Program-made: the position numbers and the translations under genes | In this document: positions 1 to 52,205 of the stretch, in pieces | How positions within the stretch are numbered: the first letter of the stretch is position 1 | Layout of the letters: every line of letters starts with the position of its first letter | NCBI RefSeq assembly: GCF_020745735.1 | Contig: NC_083409.1 | Coordinates: forward strand, 9,351,534 to 9,415,533 | DNA length: 64,000 bases | Direction of reading: 5' to 3' | DNA from: Hemiscyllium ocellatum | Lineage: Eukaryota | Notes under the pieces: model-generated | Database searches by the model: none | What the model saw: only the letters and a program-made list of their open reading frames with translations | Told to the model about the DNA's origin: nothing

Positions 1-539
1 ATGGGCTGCCAGAGGGAGTGGTGGAGGCTGGTATGATTACAATATTTAAAAAGCCATCTGGATGGGTATATGTATAGGAAGGGTTGAGAGCGACATGGGC
101 CTCATACTGGCAAATGGGACTAGATTAATTTAGGGTATCTGGTCAGGATGGATGACTTGGACTGAAGGGTCTGTTTCTCTGCTGTACATCTCCATAAATG
201 TAATTGTATTTCAATCGAGCCCCTAACACCTCAGGCTCTCCCAAAGACATTTACATTTTGTTTTAAAACAAGTCACTGTTGCAATGTCAGGAAAGGGACA
301 GCCAATTTCTACACAGCAAGATCCCACTAGAAGCAATGAGATCAAAGAGCATTTTTGATGATGTTGGTCCAAGGATAAATATTGTCCTGAACTCAACCCA
401 AAGAGAAAGGAATTTGGTTCAGTTGGATGGAAAATGAGAAAATGGAAGGTAAAGGAGAAGGCAGGATTGCTGGTTAGTGATGGGATTGATTGTTACCAGA
501 AAATAAAAGGAAGGGATAGAATTTTTGAATATTAAAGGA

Positions 540-3400
540 ACCATAAAAGTGCAGGGAAAACGAAGAATAGAACAAACTTAAAGGGTTTGTATCTAAATGC
601 ACGAAGCATTCTGAGTAAGGCAGACAAAGTGATGCCATAAATCGAGGTAAATTGAGTTTCCAAGGAATTTAAACTAGTTAAAGTGGAGGAGGGCTCAAGA
701 GAGGCTATTCGGTTTCTAGAAGGCATACCAGGAGAGAGAGTACAGAAAGGAACAAGAGTCGAGCATCAAGCACAGCAGATAAGAGGATAATGATGAGAAG
801 GAGGGCAGTCAATGCAGGACTGAAGGTGTTGGACTTAAAAGCACACAGTATACGCAATGAGCTGGTAGTGCAGATTGAAACTGGCAGGTACGATGTTGTG
901 GGTATCACAGAGACATGGCTGTAAGGGGATCCGGGCTGGGAACTAAATATCCAAGGATACATGTCCCATCAAAAGAACAGGCAGATGGACAGAGGGGGAA
1001 GAGTTGCCTTGTTAGTACGATATTAAATTAAATCAAAGCAAGAAGTGAGATAGAGTCAAAAGGTGTAGAATGTGTGTGGGTAGAGTTGAGGAACCGCAAG
1101 AAATAAAGAATCTGATGCAAGTTATGTCCAGATCTCCAAGCAGTAATCAGGGTGTGGGGAAGGAAATCAATCAGGAGACAGAAAAGCCATATACAAAATG
1201 TCAGGGCAGACCTCAATGGATAGGTGGACTGGGTAGCACGTCTCAAGAAAAGGATTTCATGGATGTCTACAAGATCGGTTTTGGAGCAGCTTGCGGTTGA
1301 GCCATTATGGAACAGGCAGTTCTGGATTCAGTGATGTGGAATGAGGCAAACTTGATTAATGAGCTGAAGGTGAAAGTATCCTTCTGGAAAAATGATCATA
1401 ATATGATAGAATTCCCCCTGTAGTTTGAGACGGAGAAGCTGCAATCAGATGGATCTGCATTTCAGTTGAGTAAAGGGAACAACAAAGACATGAGGAAGGA
1501 GTTGACCAGAGTTGGTTGGAAGGGGAGCCGAGCAGGTAAGATGGTGGGGCAGCAAACAGCAGGGTTTCTGGGCATAATTCAGGAACCAGAGCAGGAATTC
1601 ATCCGAAAAAAGAAGAAACATACTAAGGGGAGGACAAGGCAACCATGGCTGGTGAGGGAAGTCACGGACAGCATAAAAGCAAAAGAAAAAAATGCACAAT
1701 GTGGTAGTGAAAAGTGGGAAGCCAGAGGGTTAGGAAGCCTTTAAAAACCTGGAGAGGATAAATAAAAAAGCATTAAAGGTGGAGAAGGGGAAATGTGGTG
1801 GTAGGTGAGCCGGTAATACAAAAGAAGATTATAGGAAGTGAAGAAATAGCAGAGGAATTGAATCGAAGCTGAAAGGTTGAATGTGGATAACTCACCCAGA
1901 CTAGATGAACTACATGAGTGTGTTCTAAAGGAGATCACTGAGTAAATTATGGAGGTATTGGAGATGATCTTTCAGGAATCAATGGAGTCAGGGTATGACA
2001 GTGTGGTGGACAGGGATCTGATGGGGGCAAAGGATTGGAAAGTGGCTCACATAACAGCCCTGTTTAAGAAGGGAGGGAGGAGGGAGAAGATGGGAAATTA
2101 TAGGCCAGTTAGCCTGGACTCAGTTGTTGGTAAGGTTTTAGACTTCAATTTAAGGAAGAAATTGCAGAGGACTTGGAGGTGCAATTGTAAACTAGGGCTG
2201 AGTCAACACGGCTTCATCAAGGGGAGGTCATGCCTGGCAAATCTGTTAGAATTCTTTGAGGAGGCAATGAGCCAGTCAGACAAAGGAGAGTCAAAGGAAG
2301 TAATCTATTTGGATTTCTAGAAGGCCTTTGACATTAGATAAGAGCATACAGTGTGAGGGCCGAGGCACTGGCATGGACTAAGGATTGGCAGGTTGGCATA
2401 AAGCAGAGAGTGAGGAAAAATGGCCGTTGGTGACTGGTAGAGTCATGTAGGGGTCAATGTTAGGACCTTAACTATTCACGTTATACATTAACAATCTGGA
2501 TGAAGGAAGTGGAGACATTGTTGCTAAGTTTGCAGATGACATGAGATAGGTGGAGGGACAGGTAGTGTTGAGGAAGTGGGAAGAATGTAAAAGCTCCTGG
2601 ATAGGCTGGGAGAGTGGGCAAAGAAGTGGCAGATAGAATACAATGTGTTACAGTGTGAGGGTGTGCACTTTGGGAGGAAGAAGAGATGCAAAGACTATTT
2701 TCGAAATAAGAAAAGCTTTTGGAAATCTAAAGCACGAACCTCATTCAGGTTTCCCTTCAGGTTAACAGGCAGGTCCAGTTTGTGCTTGGGAAGGCAAATG
2801 AAATGATAGCATTCATTTCAATAGGGCCAGAATACAAGAGCAGAGATGTACTGCTGAGGCTGTGTAAGGCTCTGGTCAGACTGCATTTGGAATATTGTGA
2901 GCAGATTTCGGACCCATATTCTAAGAAACAATGTGCTGGCATTGGAGGGGTTTACAACAATGATCTTGGTGATGAAGGACTTATCGTATCAGATGTGCTT
3001 GAGGACTCTGGGTCTGTACTCAATGGACTTTAGAAAGATGAGGAGGGATCTTATTGAAATTTACTGAATACTGATCAACCTGGATAGAGTGGATGTGAAA
3101 AAGATGTTTCCAAAAACAGGAGAGAGTCGGTAACCAAGGCACAGCCTCAGTATGAAGGGCCAACCCTTTCGAGCTGAGATGAGGAGGAATTTCTTCAGCC
3201 AGAGGGTGGTGAATCTGTGGAATGTATTGCTACAGAGGGCAGTGGAGGCCAAGTCACTGAGTGTATTTAAGACAGAGGTAGATAGTTTGTGATAGTTAAG
3301 GGGATCGAACGTTCCTGTGGATCAAGCAGAGAATGGGGGTGAGAAGCATATCTGCCAAGATCAACTGGCAGAGCAGATTCAATGGGCTGAATGGCTGATT
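540..3400 (+). mobile_element. Decayed CR1-type LINE (endonuclease + RT)
   Basis: Broken motifs YLNARSI, DWKVAHITALFKKG...NYRPVSL, QHGFIKGRSCLANLLEFFEE, FADD and a CR1 3' end; paralogous copy at ~44470-48150 (-). Confidence 0.9.
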
Positions 3401-3539
3401 TCTGCTCCTATTTCTTAAAGTCTTCTGGAGAGTTTCCCCAAAACCCTGGAACACTGAACCCACTGGACTGTGAGCCCTGCTGGAGCTGTTTGTCATCAGA
3501 ACTTTGCCAAGAGATGACCAAAGGGTGAAGAGAGTGTGC

Positions 3540-6210
3540 ATTTAGGTGGGAACTTCAGAATGCTTCCTAGCTCCTGGAATACCATGAGAACAGAAAGTGT
3601 GGTCAGTGACAGCAGTTGGAACTCCGGGTTTCGGAGCTTGAGCAGCAGCTGGTGTCAGTTCGGAGCGTCCGTGAGGCTGAGAGCTCCGTGGAGAGCACGT
3701 TTCTAGATGTGGTCACTCTGCAGCTTCAGCGAATGCAGGGTGAGAGGGAATGGGGGAGCAGCAGACAGTCTAAAAGGACCAGGCAGCTAGTACAGGACTC
3801 CCCTGAGTGCATCGCACTCTCCAACCAGGATTCAGTTCAGAATCCTGATGAGAATGATGGTTCATCTGGGGAGTGCAGCCAGAGCCAAGCCCATGGCACC
3901 AAGGTGGAGGGTTCAGCTGTACAGGGGGTACAAGGAAGAGGGAGAGCGAGAGGAGATTCGAGAGTGAGGGAAATCGATAGGTGTTTCTGCAGTTGCAGAT
4001 GGGAATCCAGGATGGTGTGTTGTCTCCCTGGTGCCAGGGTCAAGGATGTCTCTGAGCGGCTGCAGAGCACCCTGAGGGGAGAGGGGGAACAGGCAGCAGT
4101 CGTGGTCCACATCGGTCCCAGTGACAGAGGGAGGAAAGGGATGTGGTCCTGCAGTCAGAATTTAGGGGGCTCTGGAGGGAATTAGCACTGGGATCTCAAA
4201 AGTTAGAATCTCCGGATTTCTCCCAGTGCCCCATCCAAGTGAGAATAGGAACAGGAGGATAACACAGGTGAATGTGAAGCTGGAAAGAGGATCCAAGTTG
4301 GAGGACTTTAGATTCTTGGGACATTGAGACTGGGTCTGGGGGAGATGGGACCTGGACAGACCAGACAGCGTTGTTCCTGAACCGAGCTGGGACTGAGTTC
4401 CTTTGGGGTGATTTACTAGTGCAGTTGGCGAGGGTTTAAACTAACTTGGCAGGGCTGTGGGAGCCAGGAGGGAATAACAGAGAGGAACACCAAGGACCAC
4501 AGAATCCTCAGAACAGTCAACAAGTCACCACCCAATGGGAAGGATGCAGAGGAATACAAATGCAAGGAATTTACAGATATCTGCAAACATGATAGAGTCA
4601 TTATAAATGGTTCTTTAATTTTTGAATATAGACTGGGGTAGTAGCAGTGTAACAGGCAGGGAGGGGCCAGAGTTGTGAAAGTCTGTTCAGTTGAATTTTC
4701 AGGTGGCATTGTGGCCAGTGAAGAAGGCTGTCTAAGAGGACAATGGGATCTTGACCAACTGGGCCAGTGGGCTGAGGAATGGCAGATGGAGTTTAATTCA
4801 GATAAATGTGAGTGCTGTACTTTGCAAAGCCAAACCAAGGCAGGACTTTTACGGTTAATGGTAGGGCCCTGCGGAGTGTTGCTGAACAAAGAGACTGAGT
4901 GGTGAAGGTGCAGGTGCAGGTGCATTATTCCTTGACAGTGGAGTCACAGGTAGACAGGGAGATGAAGAAGGTGTTGGGTATGCTTACTTTTATTGGTCAC
5001 TGCATTGAGTAAAGGAGTTGGGACATGATGTTGCAGCGGTACAGCAGTTGGTGAGGCCACTTTGGGAATAATGTGAACAATTCTGATCATCCTGAGATAG
5101 GAAGGATGTTGTTAAACTTAAAAGGCAGCGGAAAAGATTTACAAGGATGTGGCCAGGAATTGGAGGGTTTCCGCTGTCGGGAGAGGCTGAAGAAATGGGC
5201 CTATTTTCCCTGCAGCATCTAAGGCCTCGAGGTGACCTTATGGATGTGCAGAAAATCATGAAGGGCATGGACAGGGTGTATATCCAAGGTCTTTTCCTTG
5301 GGAACGGGAGTCCAAAACAAGAGGGCATAGGTTTAAGGTGAGAGGCAAAAGATTCAAAAGGGACCTGAGTGGTAACTTGTCACACAGAGGGTGGTGTGTG
5401 TCTGGATCGAGCTGCTAGAGAAAGCGTTGGAGGCGGATTAAAATTACAACATTTAAAACACATTGGGATGGGAACATGGATAGGAAGGGTTTAGAGGGAT
5501 GTAAGCCAAATGCTGGCAAATGGGATGAGGTCATTTAGGATATCTGGTTAACACAGGCAAGTTGGACTGAAATGTCTGTTTCCACACTGTATGACTCCAT
5601 GACTATGAGCAGCTGGAAAAGCTGAGACTTTTTTCCCTCTAGTGTAAGAGTCTGAGGAGTGACCTTATAGAGGTTTATAAAATCATGAGGGACATAGATA
5701 ATGTAAATCATTCAGGAAGCAGGTGAAATTTTGTAGAAATGGCAAAAATATTCCCAAAGATCATTCCAGGGATGAGGAACATCAGTTATTAAGATAGTTT
5801 GGACAATTTGGGACTGACTTCTTTGGAGAAGGCTGAGAGGAGATTTGTTGGAGGAATTAAAATCAGGAGGGGCCTGGATACAGTAAATAGGGAGAAAATG
5901 TTCCCAAGAGAAAGGATTGAGACCGAGAGACCACAGATTGAAGGCAATTGGGAAAAGTCACAAAAGTGAGATGGGGAACAACATTTTGGCCAGTGAGTGG
6001 TTAAGGTGTGGAATGCACTGCCTGAGAGTGTGGTGGAGGCAGCTTCAATTAAAACATTCCGAAGGGAATGAGACTGATATTTGAAAAGCAACAATGTTCA
6101 GGGTGACAGGGAGAAGGCAGGAGAATGACACTCAGTGAATTGCTCATTCGGAGAGCCAGTCCAGACAGGATGGGCAGAATGGCCTCCTTGTGCAATGTGA
6201 CAATTCTGTG
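3540..6210 (+). mobile_element. CR1-type LINE fragments incl. ORF1 esterase (SGNH-like) region and RT 3' parts
   Basis: RMVCCLPGARVKDVSERL...VVVHIG (3616-4185); WAEEWQMEFNSDKCE; several stacked 3' ends; paralogous to ~40470-44350 (-). Confidence 0.85.
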
Positions 6211-6643
6211 ATTATGTGATTGAGCAGAGTTAAAGCTGGGGGAGGTGGGAGCTCGGTGTCTCACTGTGCTGCTGCTGCTGCTGAGGTCAGTGAGATCAGA
6301 GACTGGGACAGGGAGCCAGAACTCACATCAAACTCTGCCCGTGTCCGTCACACTGAGACTGGCAGGAGGCTACTCATTGAATTCACTCCATGCTGCAGGA
6401 ATGGGACCACAGGCTGCAAATGGACAGAGCTCCTCCACACGATGAGTAAAACTTACTGACTTATATCTTGCTGTTTAATGGGGTTATAGGACTAAAGAAA
6501 TACAGGTGTACACCGTATGGGACGCGGTGTTCCTCAATCAAACATTTCCTTCACTGCAACACTTCAACAATTCAGTATTTGTGTTTTATAAATTGTGTTT
6601 AGAGATTGAAAGGGTTAATAACAGAGGATTGAGGTTTACTTCC

Positions 6644-6940
6644 TCAGTCTGAGCTTGGTTCCTTTACAGAAAGTAAGGCCAGCTGTAATGCTGCTGACAG
6701 TAATAGTCAGCGACATCCTCATTCTGAACGTTGCTGATTGTCAGGGTGAAACTGGTCCCTGATCCACTGCCGGTGAATCACTCGGAGATTCCTGTGAGTT
6801 GAGTTGCTGCAGCATAGATCAGGAGAGAGGGTTTCAAGCAAGGTAGCTGCTAATGGCCCTACAGGTGATGGTTGCAGTCTGGCCCAGTCCCACTGACAGC
6901 ACCGGGGGAGACTAGGTCATGATGATGTCCTCACTGATAC
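6644..6940 (-). pseudogene. IGKV: Germline-joined kappa-type VJ pseudogene exon
   Basis: Reverse complement aligns to the right V and J with no RSS between them. TAG at 6914-6912, TGA at 6780-6778, 9-nt CDR1 deletion, 22-nt FR2 deletion removing WYQQ, joint one base out of frame, FG changed to FC, donor GT changed to GG at 6643-6642. Confidence 0.95.
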
Positions 6941-7126
6941 CTGAGGGATCAGAGAGAAACACAGTGAAGTCAGAACTTTCACAGAAAGAGCCTGTCAAAT
7001 GAGAGATTGTTGGAGACACTGAGCATTCCTCTGGTTTCAGCATTTTCCCTTCAATCACAAGTCAGTGGAATTGGAGTGAAATGGAGAGCAGCTAAAGATT
7101 CAAGGTGGAAGGAGAGAGATTTGTAC

Positions 7127-7175
7127 CTGCGACACAGAATGCCAGGGGCCAGATCAGCTGGATGTGTGAAATCAT
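7127..7175 (-). pseudogene. IGKV: Leader exon of the joined pseudogene (MISHIQLIWPLAFCVA-G), intact
   Basis: ATG at 7175-7173, GT donor at 7126-7125, one substitution versus 38948-38996; intron present with AG acceptor at 6942-6941. Confidence 0.93.
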
Positions 7176-7235
7176 GGTGTGTGCTCCTGTCCCTGTGCCT
7201 GGTTCCTGATAAACTCTCCCTTCACTGGCCTCTGC

Positions 7236-7332
7236 TTTATAAAGCTGCAGCCTGTGAGAGTCTGACTGGGTGTTCCTCAGTATGTAAATGGCATCAGGCA
7301 GAGAGAGCCACATCAGCCCCTCACACTTCCTC
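7236..7332 (-). promoter_or_regulatory. Promoter of the pseudogene cluster
   Basis: TATAAA region 7236-7243, ATTTACAT (+ strand ATGTAAAT 7282-7289) and PU-box 7324-7332 retained; TGACGTGG changed to TGATGTGG (7308-7315). Confidence 0.75.
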
Positions 7333-9299
7333 TTCTCACTCTCTCTCTCTCTCTCTCTCTGTCTCAGAGAATCATTGATGTGGACAGCACTGAATGAGGC
7401 CATTTGGCCCATTGTGTCTGTGCTGGTAAACAAAGATCTGATGATCCTCCAGCTCTTGGCCCATTACCCTGGAGGCAACAGCAATACAAGGGAATATCTA
7501 AATACTGCTCCAATGTCATGAGAGTTTGTGACTGAACCAGCCTTTCAGGCAGTGAGTTCCAGACTCCCACCACCCTCTGGGTGAAAACATTTCTCCCTAA
7601 CTCTTCTCTCACTCTCCAACTCGATTGGGCCTGGACTCAGAAGGATAAGAGGGGATCTGATTGAAATGTATAATATTCTAACAGGGCTGGGCAGGGAGGA
7701 GGTTTCCCCTGGTTGGGGAGTCTGGAACCGGGGGGACAGTCTCAGGGGGATATGGGGTAGACCATTTCAGACTGAGATGAGGAAACATTTCTTCACTCAG
7801 AGGATGGTCGATCTGTGGAATTATCTTCCACTGAAGGCTATGGAGGACAAGGAACTGAATATATTCAAGAGAAAGAGAGAGATATTTGTTTTGCATTTTA
7901 ACAGCATGAAGGGAATGGGGAGAAAGTAGGAAGGTGACTTCAAGAGAGAGGATCAGCCATGATCATACTGAATGACAGAACAGTCTCAAAGGGCCGAATG
8001 GCCTACTCCTGCAGCACTTCCTTTGTGTCCATGTCTATTTTTCCTTCAATCTCTGTCCCTGGTTATTGAGTCCTTGACTCTTGTAAAAAGTGCCTTCTTT
8101 CTCACCCTATCACTGCCCTGAATAATCTTATCCCCCTCTATCAGGTCCCCTCTCAGCCTTCACTGCTGCATGGAAAAAAACCCCAACCATTCCAATCTTT
8201 CCCCACAGCTGACCCTCCATCCCAGGCAGCATCCTGGTAAATCTCTGCACCCCCTCAAGTACAATCACATCCTTCCAAGAATGTGGTGACCAGGACTTGT
8301 CCCTCTGTCTCTGTCTCTCTCTCTCTTTCTCTCTCACTCTGTCTCAAAGCCACTCTCTCCAACTTACACTTCCTCACTCCGTCTCATAATCTCTATTTCT
8401 GCATCTTTCTCTCTCACCATCACTCGCTCCATTGCTCGCTTCAATTGAAAACCTCCAAATGTTAATTGCCCCTCTCTATTCCTCTCTCTGTCTCTCCTTC
8501 CCTCTCTGCACCCCAATCTACAGTCTCTCTCTCTCCATCTCTGTCATTCTGTCTCTTACCATACTCATGTCTCTCTATCACACTCAACCCTACCCACTCT
8601 CTCTTGATTCCCTTCACTCTTGGTATCACACCCATCCTATCTCTTTTTCTCTATCCATCCCGATCAGTCACATCTTGTTTCTCTCTCTCTCTATCCCTCA
8701 ATCACACCACGTCTACCTCCCTCTACCTCTCTCTTGGCCCCTTCACATATCACACACTGTCTCAGATGCCCCTCCTTCTATCGCTCGATCACACACACAA
8801 TTTGCATCTACCTCTCTCTTTGTCTTGTTTCTCTGTCTTTCTCACAGTGTCCAAGGTGGTGAAAGTTGAATTCAGGATAAATCTCCCTCTGCTCTGCCCC
8901 ACTAATGGATGTTAACCCTTGACCCAAAATCATGTCTTTTCCTGGAGTAACTCCCCATTTCTCACATTGACCAGGGTTTGACCTCATTCAGGACGATGGA
9001 CAGATTCTTGTCAAATGAAGGGGAGTTCTGTTCTGTTGCCCTATTCTCACTGGGGACTGGTTTGGACACAAACCTCATTCCACGAAGGCCCAGCAGAGAG
9101 AGGAGATCCTCAGGCCATCAGTGTGAGCTGGAGGGACAGGACAATTTCTGACCCAGTGACCCAGCCTGTCCATCCACAACATGTTCCAATCCTTTTCCCT
9201 TTCCTTCCCCTTCCATGATCAGTCTCTGAATCAGGCTGTTTGACTGGGATGAGGGCTGGAGCATCACACTGTTACAACAGAAAGGAACTGAACACATAC

Positions 9300-9560
9300 C
9301 CACCATGTGTTCATGACGTACTGGATTCTCCAACAGAGTCCACTAAACATGGAATTTAGTTCACAAGGCTGATCGATAGAGAGACATGGGCCTCCTTCCC
9401 ACTGAAGTTCCCAGAAGAGATCAGTAAACATGAGCTCCTTCCTGCTGGAATCTCCAACAGAGACCAGTAAACATTGGCCTACTTCTGATTTGATCCTCCA
9501 AGAGAGATCAGTAAACATGGGCCTCCTATTCATTGGACTTTCCGATTCAGACAAGTAGAT
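9300..9560. repeat. Degenerate 43-44 bp tandem array, promoter-proximal part, left copy
   Basis: Core (A)GACCAGTAAACATGG recurs at 9341, 9422, 9465, 9509. Confidence 0.85.
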
Positions 9561-9561
9561 G

Positions 9562-10805
9562 ACTTGAGTTTTTGAAGAAGTAATCACAAACCTTGATAAA
9601 GGTAGAGCAGTACACTCTGTCTACTTGGACTTTAGCAAGGCCTTAGACAAGGTTCCTCATGGTAGATTGCTCAGTAAGATTATATCACATAGGATCCAAG
9701 GAGAGTGAGCCAATTAGATATAAAATTGGCCTGATGATAGGAGGCAGAGGCTGGTGAGAGAGGGTTGTTCTTCAGACTGGAGGCCAGTGACCAGCCGTCT
9801 GCCACAAGAATCGATCCTGGATCCACTGTTGTTCGTCATTTATATGAACAATTTGGAGAGAAAATAGCAGGAATGGTCAGGAAGTTTGTGGCTGACATTA
9901 AAATTGTTGGCATCGTGGACAGGGAAGAAGGTTATCGAAGAGTGCAATGTCATCTTCATCAACTGGGCCAGTGGGTCAACAAATCCAGATGGAAATTCTG
10001 ATGAATGGAAGGAGTTACATTTTGGTAAGGCAAACCAGGGCAGGAATTACACAATTAATGGTAGAGCCATGGGGAGTGTTGTTGAACAGAGAGACCGAGG
10101 GGTACAGGTACATAGTTCCTGGAAAATGGTGTCACAGGTAGACAGGGTGGTGAAGAAGGTATTTGGCACGTGCACCTTCACTGGTCAAAGCAGAGAGTAC
10201 AGGAGCTGGGACATCATGTTACAGCTGTACAAGGCATCGGTAAGGCCACATTTGGTCACTGTGTACATTTATGCTCACCCTGCTATAGGAAGGAAGTCAT
10301 TACGCTGGTTTGAATAAAAGAAAGATTAACAGGGATGTTACCAAGATTGGAGGGTTTGAATTATAAGGCGAGGATGGATATGCCAAGATGTTTTTTCCAG
10401 GGAATGCAGGAGATTGAGGGGTGACCTTATATAGGTTTATAGAATCATGAGGGTCATAGATAAGGTAAATAGCCAAAGTCTTTTCCCCAGGGTAGGAGAA
10501 TCCAGTACTAGAAGGAATAGGTTTAAGTTGAGGGGGGAAAGGATTAAAAGGAAACTGAGAGACAACCTTTTCACACAGAGGTTGGTGTGTATGTGTAATG
10601 AGCTGCCAGAGGAAGTGGTAGAGGGGAGTACAGTTACTACATTTCAAGGAGATTTTTACAGCAACATGGATAGGAAGGATTCAGAGAGATTTGGGCCAAA
10701 CACAGGCAAATGGGATTTGTTCAGTTTTGGAAACTTGGTAAGCATGGATGAGTTGGGCTGAAGGGCCTGATGCCATGCTGTAAACCTCTATGACTCTATG
10801 ATGAT
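9562..10805 (+). mobile_element. 5'-truncated CR1 LINE splitting the 44-bp array
   Basis: Begins at EFFEEV of RT, continues through DFSKA..KV and HVRPHL motifs to a (ctctatga)n tail. Confidence 0.88.
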
Positions 10806-10809
10806 GTAT

Positions 10810-10960
10810 ACATGAGCCACCTTCCCATAGAACCAGTAAACATGGACCTCCGTCCCACTGGAACCTCCAACAGACACCAATAAACATGGACCTCCTTCTC
10901 ACTGGATGCTTCAGGAGAGACCAGTAAACATGGGCCTCCTTCCCACTGGACTGTCCAGTA
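10810..10960. repeat. 44-bp tandem array, distal part, left copy
   Basis: Core at 10834, 10878, 10922 (period 44). Confidence 0.85.
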
Positions 10961-12914
10961 CTTGAGCTGCAAACCCCAAATCCACTCCATCATGAAGGTC
11001 CCTTATTTCAGTCTCAACAACACTGTCTGTCTCTGCACGACTTCAGTCCCCTGACCACAGAAACACTAATTCCTGCTTGTCCTAACTATTGATTCCAATG
11101 TCCTCTCCCGGCTTCCTGAAGTCACATTCCATAAACCCCAACTTGTCTGATATGGAGTGGTCCCTTCCTTGTCTGACATCTGAAGTCGTTCAAGAATGAG
11201 CTCACTGCCAACCAATTGCCTCCATGGCCTCCCTCCTCCCTCAATCTGTGTCCTGCTGCAGACTCACTTTCCCTCCCTCCCCTTTCCATCTTCTGTCTCT
11301 AGTCTCCTGCCCATTGCTGCTTCCTCCATCCCACCATTGACAGCAGAGCCTTCAGGCCCCTACAGCATGCTCTCTGACCTCCTGCCCTTCATCCCTCCTC
11401 CTCCTCTCAATTGTTGTGTTACTGAATATATTGTTCAGTCCCATTGCTTTTGGTTTACTGTTCCCTTGTCATTGATTTGCTGACTTACTCTAGTGAATCT
11501 AGTCTGGGCCTGTTTCCTGAGTTGTCAAGAGTGTTTGAGAAAGCATTCTTCTGTAAACTGGATTGTCTGTTTCTCCCAGTCTTTGTGTAAAGGTGAGACT
11601 AAGTGTGTGTAAGTTCTTATACAGCACAGACAGAGGTCATTGGGCCTATTGTGACTGTTAGACAAATTAGTCCAATGAGTCCCATTTCCCCAGCCCTTCC
11701 TGTATAACCCTGCAATTGTTTCCTTTACAGCTATTTCTCCAAAGGCCCTTTTGAAAGTTGCTGTTGAATCCACTCCCACTCACCTTGCAGACAGACATCA
11801 TAAACTCGCTGGATAAAAATGTTCCTATCTTCTCTCTTGTTCTTCAGACCCTTTCTGAAATCTGTGCCCTCTGGTTACTGACCCTCCAGCCTGGAGAAAC
11901 AATTTGTCCTGTATTTACTGCATCCAAACTCTCTAATTGTGAACCCCTCATTGAGTGAGATCTATTTCCAGCACAGGGGGAGAACATTCAGCCTGTCAGG
12001 TAAATGCTGTCATTTCATGGAGCAATCCAGTCAGTCCCACCCCCTCCCCTACTCGACCCCCAGAGCCTTGCAGGTTTATTTCCATCAAGAGCCCATCCAA
12101 TCTGCCATTGCAATCACTGAGTGTCTTCACCTGAATGGCACTAATTTCCAATTTATTACCAATTGCTGTTCAAAACAAAGTTCTTTCTGACATCCCGAAT
12201 CTCTTGCCCAACAAAATGTAAGGTAACTTAAATGTGAAGATGGTATTTTGTCTCCACACGGACTGTGCGGTGGTGACCCTTACTGATACTGTCATGGACA
12301 GATACACCAGCAGCAGGCAGGTTGGTGAGGGTGATAGTGAGTATGTTGTTTCCTCTTGTTGGTTCCCTCACCACCTGCCCCAGGTCCAGTCGAGCAGCTG
12401 AATCAGGTGGAACCTGACCAGCTTGCTCAGTAGTGATGCTTCTGAGCAGCTTTTGATGGTGGACTTTGAAGTCCCTTACTCACGGTATATCCTGCATCAT
12501 TCCCACCCTCAGTGCTCCCTCCAAGTGTTGTCAAACATGGAGGAGGACTGACTGCTCCGTTGAGGTTGGAGCGGAGGGCGGTGCTATGTGGTAATCAGCA
12601 GGAGGTTTCCTTCCCCATGTTTGACCTGCTGTCATGAGGCTTCATGGGTTCCATAGTTAATGGTGAGGACTCCCAGGGCAACTCCCTTCTGACTGTACAC
12701 ACCACTGTGTTGCTTTCCCTGCTTGGTCTATCCTGCCAGTTAAAAACTGAATGAGGGAACAATTCTGTGCAGGTTTCACAGCTTGGAGACAGAGCTGCTG
12801 CTGGATTCTGTTTCTAATCTCGAAGTGCAGGCGTGTGTGTTTGTGAGAGAGTGACTGACACTTTTTCCATCACTGTGCTGTTTCTGAAAAGAAAAATCCC
12901 AGAACCAGCCTCCT

Positions 12915-13205
12915 GTGCTGTCAGGTTCCAGGGAGAGCAGACAGTTCACAGTTTTCTCCCATCTCAGTAACAAACACCCAGCTGCTCCGAGCTCCTTCTT
13001 TCACTTCCTCTTTTGGTGAATTTTCAACCTTGTGCTCTGACAGTCTTTGCAACTATTTTTTACACTGGGGCTTTCTGCTGTGGTCAGAATCTCTAATAAT
13101 AAGTGTCTAATCAGTGACAATCACAGCAGCTAAGAGCAGTCAGGACTGAAAAGCCCGGACTCACTGTGTAACATATTGGGAAGATCAAAGCCATCCTCTT
13201 CATCT
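12915..13205 (-). promoter_or_regulatory. Conserved non-repeat island with Ets-IRF composite element and E-box (left copy)
   Basis: GAGGAAGTGAAA on - strand (12999-13010), CAGCTG 12979-12984; ~90% identical by eye to 34200-34490. Confidence 0.55.
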
Positions 13206-13799
13206 CCTGCTCCAAACTCCATCCCTCTCCCTGGGGGTCTGCTGCACAACCAGACCCTTTACAAACGTGGCCACATCTCTGAGAATGATCTGACCCCTAT
13301 ATCCTCCATATTATACAGACCAGCCACTGAAAATCTCAATCATGTCTGTGGGACTCCAAACATGACCATTCCAATGTTGTGCTAGCACACATCACAGCAA
13401 TCGCCCTCCATAACCTTCAGTTCATCCCAAATTCTGATGCCTGTATTCAAACTTGCATCAAGTCCTGTTCCCCCAACCCCCTGCACCCTGTATCTACATT
13501 GGCTCCTCTCCAGCAACTCCTTGATTGTCGAGTTCTCATCCTTGTTCGCAAAACCCTCTCTGCCCTCCACCCTCCCTATCTCTGCCTCAGTCAGTGTGAT
13601 CAGCAATCTTGGATGTACAGCTCTCTGTTTCTTCATCCAAGTCATTCAGAAATATCATAAAAAGCTGAGCTCCCAGCACAGATCCCTGGGGATACCACTA
13701 TTCACATCTTCCTCACTGGAGGATGCACTCACTATTCTTCCTCTCTGCCTCCTACCTCCAAACTAATTCCTGACCAAAGACAAATACTTTTCTCTGATT

Positions 13800-14850
13800 G
13801 GCTTGATGGTAGGAAGCAGTGGGTAACAGTGGAAGGATGCTTGTCAGACTAGAGGCCTGTGTCTAGTGGAGTGCCTCAGGGCTCAGTCCTGGGCCCATTA
13901 CTCATTGCTATCTACATCAATAATTTGGATGAGAATCTGCAAGGCATGATTGGGAAGTTTGCAGATGACATTACAGTAGACATTGAGGGAGGTTATCAGA
14001 AATTGCAGCAGGACCTTGATCAGCTGTAGAAATGAGCAGAGAAATGACAAAATGAGTTCAGAGAGATAATTGTGATAATTGCACTTTCGGAAGTTTAATC
14101 GAGGTGGGAGTACCATGGTGAATGGTAAGGCCTTAAGGACTGTAGTGAAACAGAGAGATCTTGGAGTTCAGGTACACGGTTCTCTGGAAGTTGAGTCACA
14201 GTTCGACAGGGCAGTGAGGAAGGCTTTTGACACTCTGGCCTTCATCAGTCAGGGCATTGAGTATAGAAGTTGAGAAGTTATGTTACCATTGTACAGAACG
14301 TTGGTGACGTCGCACTTGGAGTATTTGGTCACCTTGTTATAGGAAGGACATTATTAAACTGGAACAAGTTCAGAGGAAATGTACAAGCATGTTGCTAGGA
14401 CTCAACAATCTGAGTTTTTGTGAGAGGTTGGACAAGCTAGGACTTTTTTCAGAGAGTGTAGGAGACTGAGGGTTTTTTTTTAGAAGTGTATAAGACCTTG
14501 AGAGACATGGATAGGGTGAATGCACTCAGTCTTTTTCCCAGGGTTGGGGAATTGAGGATGAGAGGGGTTTTAGGTTAGAGGAGAAAGAATAAAAGGGAAC
14601 CTGAGGGACAACTTGTTTACACAGAGGGTGGCACGCATATGGAATGATCTGCCAGTGGAAGTGATTGAGGCGGGTATATTAACAACTTTAAAAAGGCATT
14701 TGGACAAATGCATGGATAGGAAAGGCTCCGAAGGATATGGGCCAAGTGCAGGGAAATGGGGTTAGCATGGATGGACATTTTGGTCAGCATGGACCAGTGT
14801 GGACCAAAAAGCCTGTCTCTGTGCTGTAGGACTCGATGACTCTTTGACTC
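13800..14850 (+). mobile_element. CR1 LINE, inserted in the left arm after the duplication
   Basis: RT 3' half and tail; its flanks are contiguous in the right arm at ~33320-33360. Confidence 0.85.
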
Positions 14851-16159
14851 TATAATTCCATATGTTTCCATGTTTACGGACAGTCTCTCAAACGCAGAAC
14901 AAAGTAACGAACAGCAGGACTAGGCCATTCAGCCCTTCGAGTGGGGTCTGCCATTAAATATGACCATGGCTGATCATTCAACTTAGTCCCCTGTTCCCAC
15001 TTTTTTCCCATAACCTTAATCCCTTTCGTCCTAAGTCCCTTTAGACCTATCTCCTTCTTGAAAACTTTTAATGTTTTGGTCTCAACTGCTTTCTGTGATA
15101 GAATATTCCATCAGCTTCCCACTCTCTGGCTAAAGAAATGTCTCCTCAGCTCAGTCTGAAATAACCTTTCCCTTTTCTTTAAACTGTAATTCCTGATTCT
15201 GGATTCTCCAATGATCAGGAACATACTTCCTGTGTTTTTCCGGTCTTGTCCTGTTAGGATTTTAAAGGTTCCAACGTGATTCCTCTCAATCTTCTAACCT
15301 CCAGTGAATATAATCCTAACTGATCCAGTTTCTCAACAGATCTAAGTGCTGTCATCCCAGGAATCAGTCTGGTAAACTTTCGCTGTCCTCCCTCCACAAC
15401 CAGAACATCCTTTCTCAGATAAGGAGACCAAAACTGTACACAATACAATCATAAAATCACACAGTACAGAACAGGTCCTTCAGCCCATTAACTGTGTACC
15501 AGCCAAACTACACTAAACCTGCACCAATCCCACTTTCCATTATGAGCCCATAGCTAGAATGTTATGACATTTCAACTGCTCACCCAAGTACTTTTTAAAG
15601 TTTTTGAGGTTTCCCACGTCAACTGCTCTCCCAGGCTGTGCGTTCCAGACACCCACCACCCTCTGGATAAAAAAACATTTTCCTCAAAACATCTTGAAAC
15701 TTCCTATCTTTCACAATGAATGTAAACCAACTTTTTATTGACCCTCCCATGAAGAAGAACAGCTGCTTTCTCTCCTCCCTGTCCATTCCTCTCATAACCT
15801 TATACACCTCGATCAGGTCCCCCTCCACCTTCTCTGCTCTGAAGAAAACAACCGAGCTGATCCAATTTCTCTTCATCACTAAGAGGCTCCGTCCCACACA
15901 ACATCCTGGTGATTCCCCTCTGCACCCCATCCAGTGCAATCACATCCTTCCTACAGTGTGGTGACCTGAACTGCACACAGTACTCCAGCTGTGGGCTAAC
16001 CAATGTTCTGCTTAACTGCACCATATCCTCCTGCTTTTATAACCAATACCTGACATGGCCAAGGCAAGTGTCCTCTGTTAACCTGTCTTGCCCCATTCGG
16101 GGATCAGTGGACAAGTACCCCAAGATCATTCTGTTCCTTTGAGCTTTCTCAGGTCCAAG

Positions 16160-32300: not shown

Positions 32301-33330
32301 GGAAGGATGGGATTGTATTGGAGGGGGTGCAGAGAATAGTCACCAGGATGTTGCTTGGGATGAAGCATTTCAGCGATGAAGAGAGGCTGGATAAACTCGG
32401 GTTGTTTTCTTTGAAGCAGAGAAGGTTGAGAGGACCTGATAGAGGTGTAAACGGCTATGAGGGGAATGGACACAATGAATAGAAAGCAGTTGTTCCTCTT
32501 CTTCGGAGTTGGCACACATTCACTGTGAAAGACAGGAGCTTCATAGGGGATTTGAAGAGGAGATTTTCACCCAGAGGGTGGTGGGGGTCTGGTTTGCATT
32601 GTCTGGGCTGGTAGTTGAGGAGGACTTTTAAAAGTACTTGGATTAACCCTTGAAATATCATAACATTTAAAGCTATGGGCCTTGTGTTGGAAATTTGGAT
32701 GAATGCAGGTTTACTGTAGTTTGGATGGTACAGGTACAATGGGTCGAAGGGCCTCTTCTGTACTGTGCGATTTTACGATTGTATTGTGTGCAGTTTTGGT
32801 CTACTTATCTGAGGAAAGATGTTCTGGCTGTGGAGGGAGGGCAGCGAAGGTTTACCAGGCTGACTCCTGGGATGACAGCAATTAGACTTAGATCTGATGA
32901 GAAACTGGACCAGTTAGGATTATATTCACTGGAGGTTAGAAGATTATGGGGAGTCACACTGAAAACTCTAGAATCCTAACAGGACAAGACAGGATGTTCC
33001 TGATGACGAAGGAGTCCAGAATCAAGGATTAAAGTTTAAGGATACGGGAAAGGACATTTAGAGCTGAGATGGAGAGAAATATTTTCATTCTACAGGAAGC
33101 CTGTAGACGTTTCTGTCACTGAAAGCAGTTCAGCTCAAACCACTGAATGTTTTCCAGAAAGGGCACAATACAGTTCTTAGAATGAAAGGGATCAAAGGTT
33201 ATGGGGATGAAGCAGGAACAGGCAGCTGAGTTGGATGATCAGCCATGATCATATTGAATGGCAGAACAGGCTCGAAGGGCTGAATGGCCTATTCCTGCTC
33301 CGAGTTTCACTGTTTGAGAGATTGTTCATC
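29400..33330 (+). mobile_element. Stacked CR1 fragments with an unclassified segment at ~29880-30840
   Basis: RT and 3' motifs (QHGF, IEKWLAG, LEYCVQFWSP, FTQRV) on +. Confidence 0.7.
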
Positions 33331-33927
33331 AACGTGGAACCATATTGAATAAGAGAAAAAACATTTGCCTTGGGTTAGGAATTAGTTTGGAGATAGGAGA
33401 CAGAGTGAGGGAATAATGTGTGTGTCCTCAAATGAGCAAGAGGTGAATAGTGGTGTGCCCAGGGATCCGTCCTGGGACTTTAGCATTTCATAATATTTCT
33501 GAATGACTTGGATGAAGGAATAGAGAGCCATATATCCAAGATTGCTGACCACACTGAGTGAGGCAGCTAGGAGGAGGTTACAGAGATGGGGAGGGTCGAT
33601 GGACAGGGAGGGACTTCAGAACAAGGACGAGAATTTGAAAATCGAGGTGTTATTGGACCGGGAGCCAATGTCGCTCAGTGAGGACAGTGGGGGATGGGGA
33701 TGGGATTTGTTGCGAGTTCGGATTCGGGCAGCAGAGTTTTGGTGTGAGCTGAAGTTTACAGAGGGCAGTGGCTGTGATGTGGCCCAAGACAACATTAGAA
33801 TGGTCATGTTTGGAGTCCCAAAGCAACGAGTGGGACTTTCAGTGAGTGATCTCTGTGCTGTGGAGGATTTGGGGCTCAGATCAGCCTCAAAGATGAGGCC
33901 AAGATTTTAAGGAATCTGGTATGAAAT

Positions 33928-34149
33928 AAAAGCCGAAAAAGCTGCAGATGCTGCAAATGAGGAACAAAAACAGAAATTGCTGGAAAAGCTCGGCAGGTCT
34001 GGCACCATCTGTGGAGAGAAAGCAGAGTTAAAATTTTGGGACGTGAACCTTCTCAGAACTGTTCTGAGGAAGGGTCACTCGACCTGAAAGGTTAACTCTG
34101 ATTTCTTTCCCCAGATGCTGCCAGACCTGCTGAGGTATTCTGTTTTTGT
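33928..34149. mobile_element. Palindromic Penelope-tail-derived element with back-to-back hammerhead-like cores
   Basis: Imperfect inverted arms centred on CTCAGAAC-T-GTTCTGAG (34052-34068); absent from the left arm. Confidence 0.75.
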
Positions 34150-34199
34150 AAAGAGTCTGGTTGAGCAGCAGACAGTGCTCAGGGAGAGGGATGGAGGTT

Positions 34200-37477: not shown

Positions 37478-37494
37478 AAAGGCAGAGAGTGTGC

Positions 37495-37530
<36 letters not shown>

Positions 37531-38763: not shown

Positions 38764-38790
<27 letters not shown>
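37478..38790 (+). repeat. GA-rich low-complexity tracts upstream of the V promoter
   Basis: (GA)n and purine-rich runs 37478-37800 and 38280-38790; mirrored as CT-rich 8300-8845 and 7331-7360. Confidence 0.85.
38100..38140 (+). repeat. Interstitial telomere-like (TTAGGG)~7
   Basis: tagggttaggtttagggttagggttagggtaagggttaggg. Confidence 0.9.
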
Positions 38791-38794
<4 letters not shown>

Positions 38795-38947: not shown

Positions 38948-38996
38948 ATGATTACACACATCCAGCTGATCTGGCCCCTGGCATTCTGTGTCGCAG
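38948..38996 (+). CDS. IGKV: Ig kappa-type light chain leader exon (MITHIQLIWPLAFCVA-G)
   Basis: ATG at 38948 (cacaccATG), 16 codons + 1 nt, GT donor at 38997; hydrophobic signal peptide; phase 1 joins in frame to the V exon at 39183. Confidence 0.95.
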
Positions 38997-39182
38997 GTAC
39001 AAATCTCTCTCCTTCCACCTTGAATCTTTCGCTGCTCTCCATTTCACTCCAATTCCACTGACTTGTGATTGAAGGGAAAATGCTGAAACCAGAGGAATGC
39101 TCAGTGTCTCCAACAATCTCTCATTTGACCGGCTCTTTCTGTGACAGTTCTGACTTCACTGTGTTTCTCTCTGACCCCTCAG

Positions 39183-39493
39183 GTATCAATGGGGAGATTA
39201 TCATGACCCAGTCTCCCCCGGTGCTGTCAGTGGAACTGGGCCAGACTGCAACCATCACCTGTACGGCCAGTCAAAGCATTAGCAGCTACCTCAGTTGGTA
39301 CCAGCAGCGAGAAGGTCAGAAACCCTCTCTCCTGATCTATGCTGCAACATCTCGATTCACAGGAGTCTCCGAGCGATTCACCGGCAGTGGATCAGGGACC
39401 AGTTACACCCTGACAATCAGCAACGTTCAGAGTGAGGATGTCGCTGACTATTACTGTCAGCAGGATTACAGCTGGTATAGCAGCTCCGCTCAA
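39183..39493 (+). CDS. IGKV: Ig kappa-type V exon, unrearranged, open ([23 protein letters not shown]...WYQQ...[19 protein letters not shown])
   Basis: Pyrimidine tract + AG acceptor at 39181-39182; both V-domain Cys, [12 protein letters not shown] and DYYC motifs; no stops; ends directly at a heptamer. Confidence 0.97.
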
Positions 39494-39521
39494 CACAGTG
39501 ATACAGAGCCATACCAAAACC
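39494..39521 (+). other. V recombination signal, 12-bp spacer
   Basis: CACAGTG (39494-39500), 12-nt spacer ATACAGAGCCAT, nonamer ACCAAAACC (one mismatch to ACAAAAACC). Confidence 0.97.
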
Positions 39522-39953
39522 TCAAGACACACAGCACCACCTCATGCACTGACACATCAATCAGTTATATAAAATGTATAATAATGGACACACAGTCCCA
39601 CAGCCTGAACTGACACATCCACAATTAGATACAAATGAAACTGAACAAATTACCCCATGCTGGGATTGTAACTGTCCATGACACACTCCAGTCCCTGTGG
39701 TGTCCACCGCTCACTGAAGGCCTCAAGTTTCCCTCTGACACTCCATGACCACGCGTGAAGAACAGCTGCAAGATTTAATATCGAAAAATAAATTTCACAA
39801 AGCTCCCAAGCCCAGCTGGACACAGAGAGAGATGGAGACAGAAAGACACATGAATGAGGGAGAGACAGAGAGGGGCAGAAAGAAGTTGAGAGTGAACGAG
39901 AGACTGGGAGACAGGGAGAGGTTGAGAGTGATGGGGGGGAAGCAGAGAGCAGA

Positions 39954-39992
39954 GGTTTTTGTACAGCCTCTGCACTGGGAACTCTCACTGTG
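39954..39992 (-). other. J recombination signal, 23-bp spacer
   Basis: On + strand GGTTTTTGT (39954-39962), 23-nt spacer, CACTGTG (39986-39992); perfect consensus. V12/J23 is the kappa configuration. Confidence 0.98.
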
Positions 39993-40027
39993 GGACACGT
40001 TCGGTAAAGGAACCAAGCTCAGACTGA
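39993..40027 (+). CDS. IGKJ: Ig kappa-type J segment (DTFGKGTKLRL)
   Basis: FGxG motif right after the 23-RSS; consensus donor A|GTAAGT at 40028, phase 1, compatible with the C exon. Confidence 0.97.
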
Positions 40028-51876: not shown

Positions 51877-52205
51877 GCCGTGAGAACTCTCAGCCCAAGC
51901 TGACCTTGCTGCCCCCCTCCCCGGAGCAGGTCAATGCCAAGGGCACTGCCACCCTGGTGTGCCTTGCCAATCACTTCTATCCCGATGAGCTGGAGGTGCA
52001 GTGGAAGAAGGACGGTGCAGTCATTTCGGACGGGGTTCAGACCAGCAACTACCTGCGAGCTTCAGACAGCACCTACAGTGTCAGCAGCCTGCTGACCCTC
52101 TCTGGGTCTGACTGGGAGTCCGACGCTCGCTTCTCCTGTGCCCTCACCCACGTGACCCTCCCCTCTCCCCTCAGCAAGAGCATCAGGAGATCAGAATGTG
52201 TGTAG
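51877..52205 (+). CDS. IGKC: Ig kappa-type constant exon (RENSQPKLTLLPPS...ATLVCLANHFYP...VQW...FSCALTH...RSECV*)
   Basis: tttctcttgtctttcAG acceptor ending 51876; intact C1-set domain with both Cys and the Trp, penultimate Cys for the H-L bond; in frame with J; resembles shark type III/NS4 C as I recall it. Confidence 0.96.

What the first reader, a model, noticed from the sequence alone, without database searches (positions are those of the whole stretch)
6644..7175. Germline-joined kappa VJ fixed in the genome, next to an unrearranged paralog
Seen: V runs directly into J with both RSSs and the ~500-bp V-J spacer gone, while the promoter, leader intron and J-C intron remain. Two stops, two deletions and a dead donor show germline ageing. 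Known: germline-joined Ig genes occur in cartilaginous fish and are attributed to RAG activity in germ cells. Inference: this is a fossil of such an event, with a near-ancestral unjoined copy 32 kb away as a built-in control.
Basis: partly seen in the sequence, partly recalled or inferred. Interest (0 to 1): 0.8.

Follow-up and report, generated by a model that had tools for sequence, protein, structure and literature searches.

The report
Germline-joined shark kappa light-chain pseudogene
This is a dead antibody light-chain gene whose V and J pieces were fused in the inherited genome, beside an intact unfused sister gene; the reading is sound, but this kind of gene, dead copies included, was described in nurse sharks in 2000.

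Summary
On the minus strand, a kappa-type leader (7175-7127), a 186-bp leader intron and a V exon run straight into a J segment (joint at 6678/6677). No recombination signal sequence (RSS) is present. An inverted paralogue, cluster B (38948-40027, + strand), keeps a canonical V 12-RSS, a 499-bp intervening sequence, a 23-RSS, J, an 11.85-kb J-C intron and an intact C exon.

The joined copy (cluster A) is a pseudogene in the window. It has TAG and TGA stops, 9-bp and 22-bp deletions, Gly>Cys in the J FGxG motif, a GT>GG splice donor, and a join that is out of frame by one base.

The best explanation is RAG-type V-J deletional joining in the germ line, followed by decay. This matches the nurse-shark NS4/kappa germline-joined genes of Lee et al. 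2000, including their joined pseudogenes R6 and R19. Leader-intron length and amplicon sizes agree to within about 10 bp.

Three caveats apply:
- Cluster B is a paralogue, not the progenitor.
- "Fixed" was not shown. Short public contigs confirm the deleted V and the intron flank in a second sample, but bridge the joint only imperfectly.
- The TAG stop and the dead donor were seen in none of the four runs laid.

First readers of this scan also noted other germline-joined kappa genes elsewhere in this genome. Interest is low: a new member of a known kind.

The parts
7176..7359 (-). Promoter block of joined cluster A. It holds an octamer-like ATTTACAT (7289-7282), a TATA-like TTTATAAAG (7243-7235) and a PstI site (7245-7250). 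A (GA)n tract at about 7324-7372 bounds it upstream.
   Evidence: It has 3 mismatches in 184 nt against the paralogue (38764-38947).
7127..7175 (-). Leader exon of cluster A (ATG at 7175-7173; 49 nt, phase 1).
   Evidence: It matches the nurse-shark NS4 leader primer NSL exactly.
6941..7126 (-). Leader intron of cluster A, 186 bp, GT..AG.
   Evidence: Nurse-shark NS4 genes have the same 186-bp leader intron. It has 4 mismatches in 188 aligned columns against the paralogue.
6679..6940 (-). V part of the fused VJ exon. Lesions: TAG at 6914-6912, 9-bp deletion at 6856|6855, 22-bp deletion at 6836|6835, TGA at 6780-6778. It ends in ...TAC AGC TGG.
   Evidence: tblastn with the paralogue's V gives E = 7e-26. 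An X1 unitig matches 6750-6889 exactly, confirming both deletions and the TGA.
6677..6678 (-). V-J coding joint. C6678 is the only base not assigned to V or J. J starts at 6677 (CTTAC...). No RSS remnant is present. The join is +1 out of frame relative to the J frame.
   Evidence: The J flank G|CTTACGTTCGG, directly after the heptamer, was recovered from split paralogues as loose ends at 6677.
6644..6677 (-). J segment of cluster A (CTT ACT TTC TGT AAA GGA ACC AAG CTC AGA CTG A). GGT>TGT at 6668 breaks the FGxG motif.
   Evidence: tblastn J hit at 6674-6645.
6638..6643 (-). J splice donor mutated from GTAAGT to GGAAGT (G at 6642 on the minus strand).
   Evidence: All contigs of all four runs read the intact T at this place, so the change may be private to the assembled haplotype.
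393..6637 (-). Retained J-C intron of cluster A, collinear with the paralogue's intron (40034-48304) and full of transposon fragments. The C exon lies outside the window.
   Evidence: (collinear blocks at 84-90% identity).
38948..39493 (+). Split paralogue, cluster B: leader exon 38948-38996, 186-bp leader intron 38997-39182, and an intact V exon 39183-39493 with an open reading frame.
   Evidence: (Pfam V-set, E = 6e-17).
39494..39992 (+). V-J intervening sequence of cluster B, 499 bp in all. It holds the V 12-RSS (CACAGTG, 12 nt, ACCAAAACC; 39494-39521) and the J 23-RSS (GGTTTTTGT, 23 nt, CACTGTG; 39954-39992). All of it is absent from cluster A.
39993..40027 (+). J segment of cluster B (..ACG TTC GGT AAA GGA ACC AAG CTC AGA CTG A), followed by the donor GTAAGT at 40028.
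   Evidence: It matches the nurse-shark primer JL5 exactly.
51878..52205 (+). C exon of cluster B (phase-1 acceptor, C1-set domain, ends ..RSECV, stop). An ATTAAA signal lies at 52345-52350. The J-C intron is 11,850 bp.
   Evidence: (Pfam C1-set, E = 1e-22).

Best explanation
Cluster A is a germline-joined immunoglobulin kappa (shark NS4 / type III) light-chain gene that is now a pseudogene.

Inferred history: in the germ line of an ancestor, a V(D)J-type (RAG-mediated) deletional recombination took place inside one V-J-C minicluster. It cut at the V 12-RSS and the J 23-RSS, discarded about 500 bp with both signals, and ligated the coding ends with minimal processing. J lost one base, and at most one base is untemplated. 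The resulting joint is one base out of frame, so the gene was probably dead on arrival, or died by a later 1-bp change. It then accumulated two stops, two deletions, a broken FGxG motif and a broken J donor.

Shown here: the anatomy, the absence of RSSs, the retained introns and promoter, the lesions, and the family match.

Inferred: that RAG was the enzyme, that the event happened in germ cells, and the order of events.
For: 1. Precise loss of both RSSs and the 499-bp spacer, with both coding flanks preserved to within about 1 nt. The flanking homology is collinear on both sides.

2. The split paralogue 32 kb away has canonical kappa-type signals, V 12-RSS and J 23-RSS. The family is therefore a RAG substrate.

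3. The J flank used in the joint (CTTAC) stands directly after the heptamer of unrearranged J segments in contigs of three runs. Those loose ends continue with the sequence CCACAGTGAGAGCTCCCAGTG..., which is the reverse complement of a J 23-RSS. The joint therefore needs no more than one non-templated base.

4. The promoter, the 186-bp leader intron and at least 6.2 kb of J-C intron are retained. The join was made in DNA, not through mRNA.

5. Decay argues against a lymphocyte rearrangement. The 9-bp and 22-bp deletions and the TGA stop are confirmed with zero mismatches in an independent run, at the depth of the unique flank: X1 record 5 at depth 6.6 against record 4 at depth 8.2.

6. In run X2 a contig bridges 6630-6717 without gaps. 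Depth accounting at 6668 and 6672 indicates that it carries the two J changes peculiar to this locus.

7. Exact precedent: nurse-shark NS4 genes.
- About 10% are germline-joined, shown from erythrocyte DNA of several individuals.
- Two of the joined genes, R6 and R19, are pseudogenes. R19 has stops and one extra nucleotide in CDR3.
- The leader intron is 186 bp and the V-J spacer is about 500 bp.
- Read off the window with the published primers, the NSL-to-JL5 distance is 520 bp in A (551 bp with the 31 deleted bases) and 1,068 bp in B. The published values are about 550 and about 1,078 bp.
Against: - No contig with zero mismatches was shown bridging 6640-6750. The three bridging contigs carry 6, 11 and 8 mismatches, so they may come from other joined paralogues.
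- The tissue and individual behind the assembly are unknown to me.
- The progenitor's V coding flank is unknown, so P or N nucleotides and V trimming cannot be scored.
- RAG involvement rests on the position of the breakpoints and on the literature, not on a direct test.
- The TAG stop and the dead donor are absent from all four runs laid. Part of the "ageing" may be private to one haplotype.
Confidence: 0.87

Rival explanations
1. A somatic (B-cell) V-J rearrangement, or an assembly chimera, was captured in the reference because the DNA came from blood or lymphoid tissue.
For: No exact-match contig was shown across the joint. The joint is out of frame, as many non-productive somatic joints are.
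Against: - Any one somatic joint at one of dozens of clusters is present in a tiny fraction of cells, so it would not win an assembly consensus.
- The V carries a frame-shifting 22-bp deletion, a 9-bp deletion and a TGA stop. All three are confirmed at single-copy-like depth in another sample (X1).
- A gapless bridging contig that shares the locus-specific J changes exists in a second sample (X2).
- Germline-joined kappa genes are documented from erythrocyte DNA in sharks.
Confidence: 0.04
2. A RAG-independent deletion (replication slippage or end joining after a random break) happened to remove the V-J spacer.
For: The enzyme cannot be identified from sequence. The progenitor's V flank is unknown, so microhomology cannot be excluded.
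Against: - Both breakpoints fall within about 1-2 nt of the heptamer/coding borders of a canonical 12/23 RSS pair.
- For a random 500-bp deletion this is very unlikely.
- The same outcome recurs in several independent NS4 genes.
Confidence: 0.05
3. The joined state is ancestral: a relic of an unsplit V exon. On this view the split paralogue arose by insertion of an RSS-bounded element.
For: The idea has been discussed historically for shark joined genes (abstract).
Against: - The joined copy is 92-98% identical to a split paralogue over promoter, leader, intron and V.
- There is no target-site duplication at the paralogue's RSS borders...CTCAA|CACAGTG against CACTGTG|GGACA....
- Phylogeny in nurse shark places joined genes inside clades of split genes.
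Confidence: 0.02
4. A retro-copied or gene-converted copy of a rearranged transcript returned to the germ line.
For: None specific.
Against: - The 186-bp leader intron, the promoter and upstream collinearity, and more than 6 kb of J-C intron are all retained.
- There is no poly(A) tail at the locus.
Confidence: 0.01

Closest known systems
Nurse-shark NS4 (kappa / type III) germline-joined genes, especially the joined pseudogenes R6 and R19 (Lee, Fitch, Flajnik and Hsu, J Exp Med 2000; PMC2193156)
   Same: - Same isotype-level architecture: octamer, PstI site, leader, 186-bp leader intron, then a V fused to J with the RSSs completely excised.
- Split family members have a spacer of about 500 bp.
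- The published leader and J primers match.
- Predicted amplicons are 551 and 1,068 bp, against about 550 and about 1,078 bp published.
- There is little or no N addition and a small loss from the J flank.
- R19 likewise has stop codons and one extra nucleotide in CDR3. R6 has many disruptions.
   Different: - The species of the window is not known to me.
- This copy sits on a predicted 2.49-kb EcoRI fragment (6379-8868), whereas R6 and R19 were on 2.1-kb fragments. It is probably not one of the cloned genes.
- Here the genomic context is visible: a head-to-head inverted pair with a split paralogue, and a J-C intron of 6 to 12 kb or more.
Uniformly germline-joined light-chain families of cartilaginous fish: lambda/type II in all species studied, and type I/sigma-2 in skates (Anderson et al. 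1995, PMC2192082; review PMC5192425)
   Same: The V-J fusion is inherited in the germ line, within the minicluster organisation.
   Different: Those families are entirely joined and functional. Here a single member of a mostly split family is joined and dead.
Chicken heavy-chain pseudo-V genes with germline VD fusion
   Same: These are fused, non-functional V-region segments in the germ line, attributed to germ-line recombinase activity followed by duplication (discussed).
   Different: They serve as gene-conversion donors and lack promoters and leaders. No donor role is shown here.

Membership tests
Germline-joined NS4/kappa light-chain genes of sharks (Lee et al. 2000) | Kappa/NS4-type V gene: leader, 186-bp leader intron, V-set exon, upstream octamer | tested here: met
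   The leader intron is exactly 186 bp in both copies, and the NSL primer matches.
Germline-joined NS4/kappa light-chain genes of sharks (Lee et al. 2000) | V and J contiguous, with no RSS and no intervening sequence | tested here: met
   There is no heptamer/nonamer pair near 6600-7200, and the paralogue's 499 bp are absent.
Germline-joined NS4/kappa light-chain genes of sharks (Lee et al. 2000) | Close split relatives with V 12-RSS, a spacer of about 500 bp, and J 23-RSS | tested here: met
   The signals are at 39494-39521 and 39954-39992, and the spacer is 499 bp including both.
Germline-joined NS4/kappa light-chain genes of sharks (Lee et al. 2000) | Joint shows the coding-end processing of V(D)J recombination: small deletions, P nucleotides, little N | tested here: inconclusive
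   J lost 1 nt relative to the flank G|CTTAC seen in split paralogues, and one base (C6678) is unassigned. The progenitor's V flank is unknown.
Germline-joined NS4/kappa light-chain genes of sharks (Lee et al. 2000) | Present in non-lymphoid DNA and shared by unrelated individuals | tested here: inconclusive
   The flanks and the deleted V are confirmed exactly in X1. Bridging contigs in X2, X25 and X9 carry 6-11 mismatches. The tissues are unknown.
Germline-joined NS4/kappa light-chain genes of sharks (Lee et al. 2000) | A linked C exon completes the V-J-C minicluster | not testable with these tools
   The J-C intron is collinear with the paralogue's up to window position 393. By that collinearity the C exon would lie about 3.6 kb beyond the window start.
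Processed (retro-copied) rearranged Ig gene | Loss of introns, a poly(A) tail, target-site duplications, no promoter | tested here: not met
   Both introns and the promoter are retained.
Somatic lymphocyte V-J rearrangement | Joint private to a lymphocyte clone; V otherwise identical to its germline gene | tested here: inconclusive
   The V with both deletions and the TGA stop is present at unique-sequence depth in another sample. This does not fit a private clonal rearrangement. Exact bridging of the joint was not shown.

The most novel reading that the evidence does not exclude
The joined/split head-to-head pair may itself be a unit of duplication.

Supporting hints:
- First readers of this scan noted two further [quoted passage not shown], one 7.1 Mb away and one on another piece (unchecked).
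- Run X2 holds a bridging contig that shares this locus's J changes yet differs at 6 of 88 bases.

If all these joined copies share the same TGG-C-CTTAC joint, one ancient germ-line joining event was amplified together with its split partner. That would imply the pre-assembled light chain was once useful.

In addition, the promoter, leader and intron of the dead copy stay about 98% identical to the paralogue. In a second species label, contigs over this block differ at 1 of 248 bases. This suggests ongoing conversion or selection on that block.
Probability: 0.2. Interest if true: 0.45.

Novelty: new member of a known kind. Interest (0 to 1): 0.25.

Why it matters
Germline-joined antigen-receptor genes are the standard evidence that the V(D)J recombinase has acted on the inherited genome of cartilaginous fish. 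This locus is a clean example because both states sit in one 64-kb window.

It adds little to what Lee et al. showed in 2000. Its modest added value is the genomic context that clone-based work could not see:
- a head-to-head inverted pair of miniclusters;
- a J-C intron of about 12 kb;
- a sharply bounded 5' block that stays almost identical in a dead gene.

It also gives a concrete locus for dating and counting germ-line joining events once all kappa clusters of this genome are compared.

Tried and rejected
1. A run search with only the 91-bp junction sampled just 6 words. No run held more than one of them, so it is uninformative.

2. Read laying returned only short Logan unitigs, not raw reads.
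- It cannot prove or disprove exact bridging of this joint.
- It says nothing about tissue.
- Bridging contigs with 6-11 mismatches may be other joined paralogues.

3. A protein search with the C exon returned only four hits. Two were mislabelled fragments in bacterial records at 86% and 79% identity, and one was a catshark fragment. It gave no isotype name and no species.

4. PDB searches rank multi-domain antibody constructs first. They do not separate kappa from lambda. The kappa assignment rests on 12/23 RSS polarity and the match to NS4 architecture.

5. A lookup of earlier findings by sequence was blank.

6. Retrocopy, relic-of-unsplit-V and palindrome-by-hairpin ideas were considered and rejected.
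- Introns and the promoter are retained.
- There is no target-site duplication.
- The centre of the inverted duplication, at about 24 kb, is 16 kb from the V-J ends.

7. I could not identify the species. Run labels are coded.

Full report
**What is there**

Read on the minus strand, the flagged stretch is an immunoglobulin light-chain gene, called cluster A here.
- Promoter elements: an octamer-like ATTTACAT at 7289-7282 and a TATA-like TTTATAAAG at 7243-7235.
- Leader exon 7175-7127, then a GT..AG leader intron of exactly 186 bp (7126-6941).
- A V exon starting at 6940. After ...TAT TAC TGT CAG CAG CAT TAC AGC TGG (to 6679) and a single C (6678), it continues directly into a J segment: CTT ACT TTC TGT AAA GGA ACC AAG CTC AGA CTG A (6677-6644).
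- After J comes GGAAGT, then intron sequence.

**The paralogue**

Self-BLAST finds an inverted paralogue, cluster B, on the plus strand.
- A 6679-7359 aligns to B 39475-38764 at 92.0% over 712 columns.
- A 6400-6674 aligns to B 40283-39997 at 81.6%.
- Between these two blocks, B has 499 bp that A lacks.

Reading B together with an RSS scan of the whole window gives:
- a V 12-RSS, CACAGTG-12-ACCAAAACC, at 39494-39521;
- a J 23-RSS, GGTTTTTGT-23-CACTGTG, at 39954-39992;
- J at 39993-40027, with a consensus phase-1 donor A|GTAAGT.

No other canonical RSS exists in the window. In particular there is none near cluster A.

B looks functional.
- Its V translates as an open V-set domain (Pfam E = 6e-17).
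- Its C exon (51878-52205) is an open C1-set domain (E = 1e-22). It has a phase-1 acceptor, a terminal Cys and a downstream ATTAAA.
- Its J-C intron is 11,850 bp.

V-12/J-23 polarity and the kappa-like V sequence place the family with kappa, which in sharks is NS4 or type III (review).

**The lesions**

- CAG>TAG (6914-6912);
- a 9-bp deletion in CDR1 (6856|6855);
- a 22-bp frame-shifting deletion in FR2 (6836|6835);
- CGA>TGA (6780-6778);
- GGT>TGT in the J FGxG motif (6668);
- donor GTAAGT>GGAAGT (6642).

In addition, the V frame and the J frame are offset by one base at the joint. The V frame runs into TAA at 6666-6664.

**The joint**

Against B alone, six bases (CCTTAC) seem to belong to neither end.

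The contigs laid resolve most of this.
- In three runs, contigs match the window up to 6677. They then continue as CCACAGTGAGAGCTCCCAGTG(CAGAGGCTG).
- That sequence is the reverse complement of a J 23-RSS heptamer and spacer. It differs from B's spacer at one position.
- So unrearranged J segments elsewhere in this family read heptamer-G-CTTACGTTCGG.
- The CTTAC of the joint is therefore J-templated, J lost a single base, and only C6678 is unassigned. It may be V-derived, P or N.
- No RSS remnant is left.

This is the pattern Lee et al. describe for nurse-shark joined genes: small losses and little evidence of TdT.

**Not a retrocopy, relic or random deletion**
- The promoter, the leader intron and at least 6.2 kb of J-C intron are retained. 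The intron is collinear with B's, 6643-393 against 40028-48304.
- B's RSS borders show no target-site duplication.
- Both breakpoints lie within 1-2 nt of the heptamer/coding borders.

**Germ-line status**

Only Logan unitigs were available.

In favour:
- X1 (organism A, sample S1) has a 140-nt unitig matching 6750-6889 with no mismatch or gap. It therefore carries both deletions and the TGA stop.
- X1 also has a 134-nt unitig matching 6507-6640 exactly. The two depths are 6.6 and 8.2, whereas multicopy parts reach about 90.
- X2 (another sample and study) has an 88-nt contig that bridges 6630-6717 without gaps, at depth 6.2. The depth sums at 6668 and 6672 indicate that it carries the window's locus-specific J letters.

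Against, or unresolved:
- That contig differs from the window at 6 positions.
- The other two bridging contigs are X25 with 11 mismatches and 2 gaps, and X9 (a second species label) with 8 mismatches and 1 gap. They may come from other joined paralogues.
- No contig in any of the four runs carries the window's letters at 6914 (TAG) or 6642 (dead donor). Those two changes may be private to the assembled haplotype.
- "Fixed" is therefore not demonstrated.

A somatic origin is nevertheless very unlikely. A single clone's joint would not win an assembly consensus. The V it uses is itself a decayed gene, present at unique-sequence depth in another animal.

**Comparison with the literature**

Lee, Fitch, Flajnik and Hsu (2000, PMC2193156) reported the following for nurse-shark NS4 genes.
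- There are about 50 genes, and about 10% are VJ-joined in erythrocyte DNA.
- The joined genes were detected in all seven sharks examined.
- They nest phylogenetically among split genes and are dated to between less than 7 and about 49 Myr.
- Two of them, R6 and R19, are pseudogenes. R19 has stop codons and one extra nucleotide in CDR3. R6 has "too many disruptions".
- They report a 186-bp leader intron and a V-J intervening sequence of about 500 bp.
- With primers NSL and JL5, they report amplicons of about 550 bp (joined) and about 1,078 bp (split).

In the window:
- NSL matches A's leader exactly, and JL5 matches B's J exactly.
- The NSL-to-JL5 distance is 520 bp in A, or 551 bp when the 31 deleted bases are added back. 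In B it is 1,068 bp.
- B's PstI fragment is 1,251 bp, compared with the published bands of about 1,150-1,400 bp. In A the downstream PstI site is mutated to TTGCAG.
- The J-RSS of the other split paralogues contains the SacI site that the paper mentions for clone S5.

The locus is therefore a member of this described class. A lies on a predicted 2.49-kb EcoRI fragment (6379-8868), not the 2.1 kb reported for R6 and R19. It is probably not one of the cloned genes, and I cannot name the species.

**How good a "control" is B?**

Identity between A and B is mosaic.

| Region | Mismatches | Divergence |
|---|---|---|
| Promoter + leader + leader intron | 8 of 419 | 1.9% |
| V exon | 19 of 261 | 7.3% |
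| J-C intron | 210 of 1,912 | 11% |

- In the V exon, 17 of the changes are non-synonymous and 2 are synonymous.
- The first 250 bp of the J-C intron are 13.7% diverged.
- Upstream of a (GA)n tract at about 7324-7372, identity falls to about 75%.
- The 5' block is significantly more conserved than V (Fisher p = 9e-4) and than the intron (p = 5e-11).
- In a second species label (run X9), contigs covering 6949-7196 differ from the window at 1 of 248 bases, at more than 100 times the unique depth. This block is therefore conserved or homogenised across the whole family.
- Given the different J flank as well, B is a paralogue of long standing and not the progenitor. It controls for architecture, not for dating.

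**Wider context**
- The two clusters are arms of an inverted duplication: 1 to about 16,073 against more than 48,304 down to about 32,178. A unique centre of about 16 kb separates the arms.
- The two promoters face away from each other's J-C introns, so the genes are head-to-head.
- First readers of this scan noted other germline-joined kappa genes in this genome. One lies 118 kb before the window and one on another piece.
- They also noted two further split/joined inverted pairs. These notes are unchecked, and I could not reach that DNA.

**Verdict**

The thing is real, but it is a new member of a kind described in 2000, pseudogene examples included. Interest is low. The only open angle is whether the joined/split pair is an amplified unit derived from a single joining event.

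Noticed in passing
window 6941-7359 versus 38764-39182: The promoter, leader and leader intron of the dead gene are 98% identical to the paralogue, while V differs by 7% and the J-C intron by 11-14%. The block starts abruptly at a (GA)n tract. In a second species label, contigs over it differ at 1 of 248 bases, at more than 100 times the unique depth. This suggests family-wide conversion or selection on the 5' block.
   Followed up: partly
window 12914-13265 versus 34498-34145: An island of about 350 bp with 90% identity lies inside upstream arms that are otherwise about 75% identical. It sits about 4.5-5.7 kb upstream of each V. Another first-reader note calls it a candidate enhancer.
   Followed up: no
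window 1-16073 versus 32178-48304: The two kappa miniclusters are arms of a large inverted duplication. The genes are head-to-head, with a unique, transposon-rich centre of about 16 kb. Scan notes report the same split/joined inverted arrangement at two other places in the genome.
   Followed up: partly
window 39476-39493: The split paralogue's V coding end is unusually long: 36 bp after the Cys codon, reading [12 protein letters not shown]. It carries about 18 more bases than the joined copy retains.
   Followed up: no
window 40028-51877: The J-C intron of the intact cluster is 11,850 bp and is filled with LINE/SINE-like fragments, including reverse-transcriptase-like ORFs. This is far longer than the classical picture of compact shark light-chain miniclusters.
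   Followed up: no
window 6914 and 6642: The window's TAG stop and its GG (dead) donor are seen in none of the contigs of four public runs, three from the same species label. They may be private to the assembled haplotype.
   Followed up: partly
P0001, P0002: The best protein-database matches to the shark C exon, at 86% and 79% identity, are labelled Aeromonas veronii and Salmonella enterica. They look like host-DNA contamination in bacterial records.
   Followed up: no
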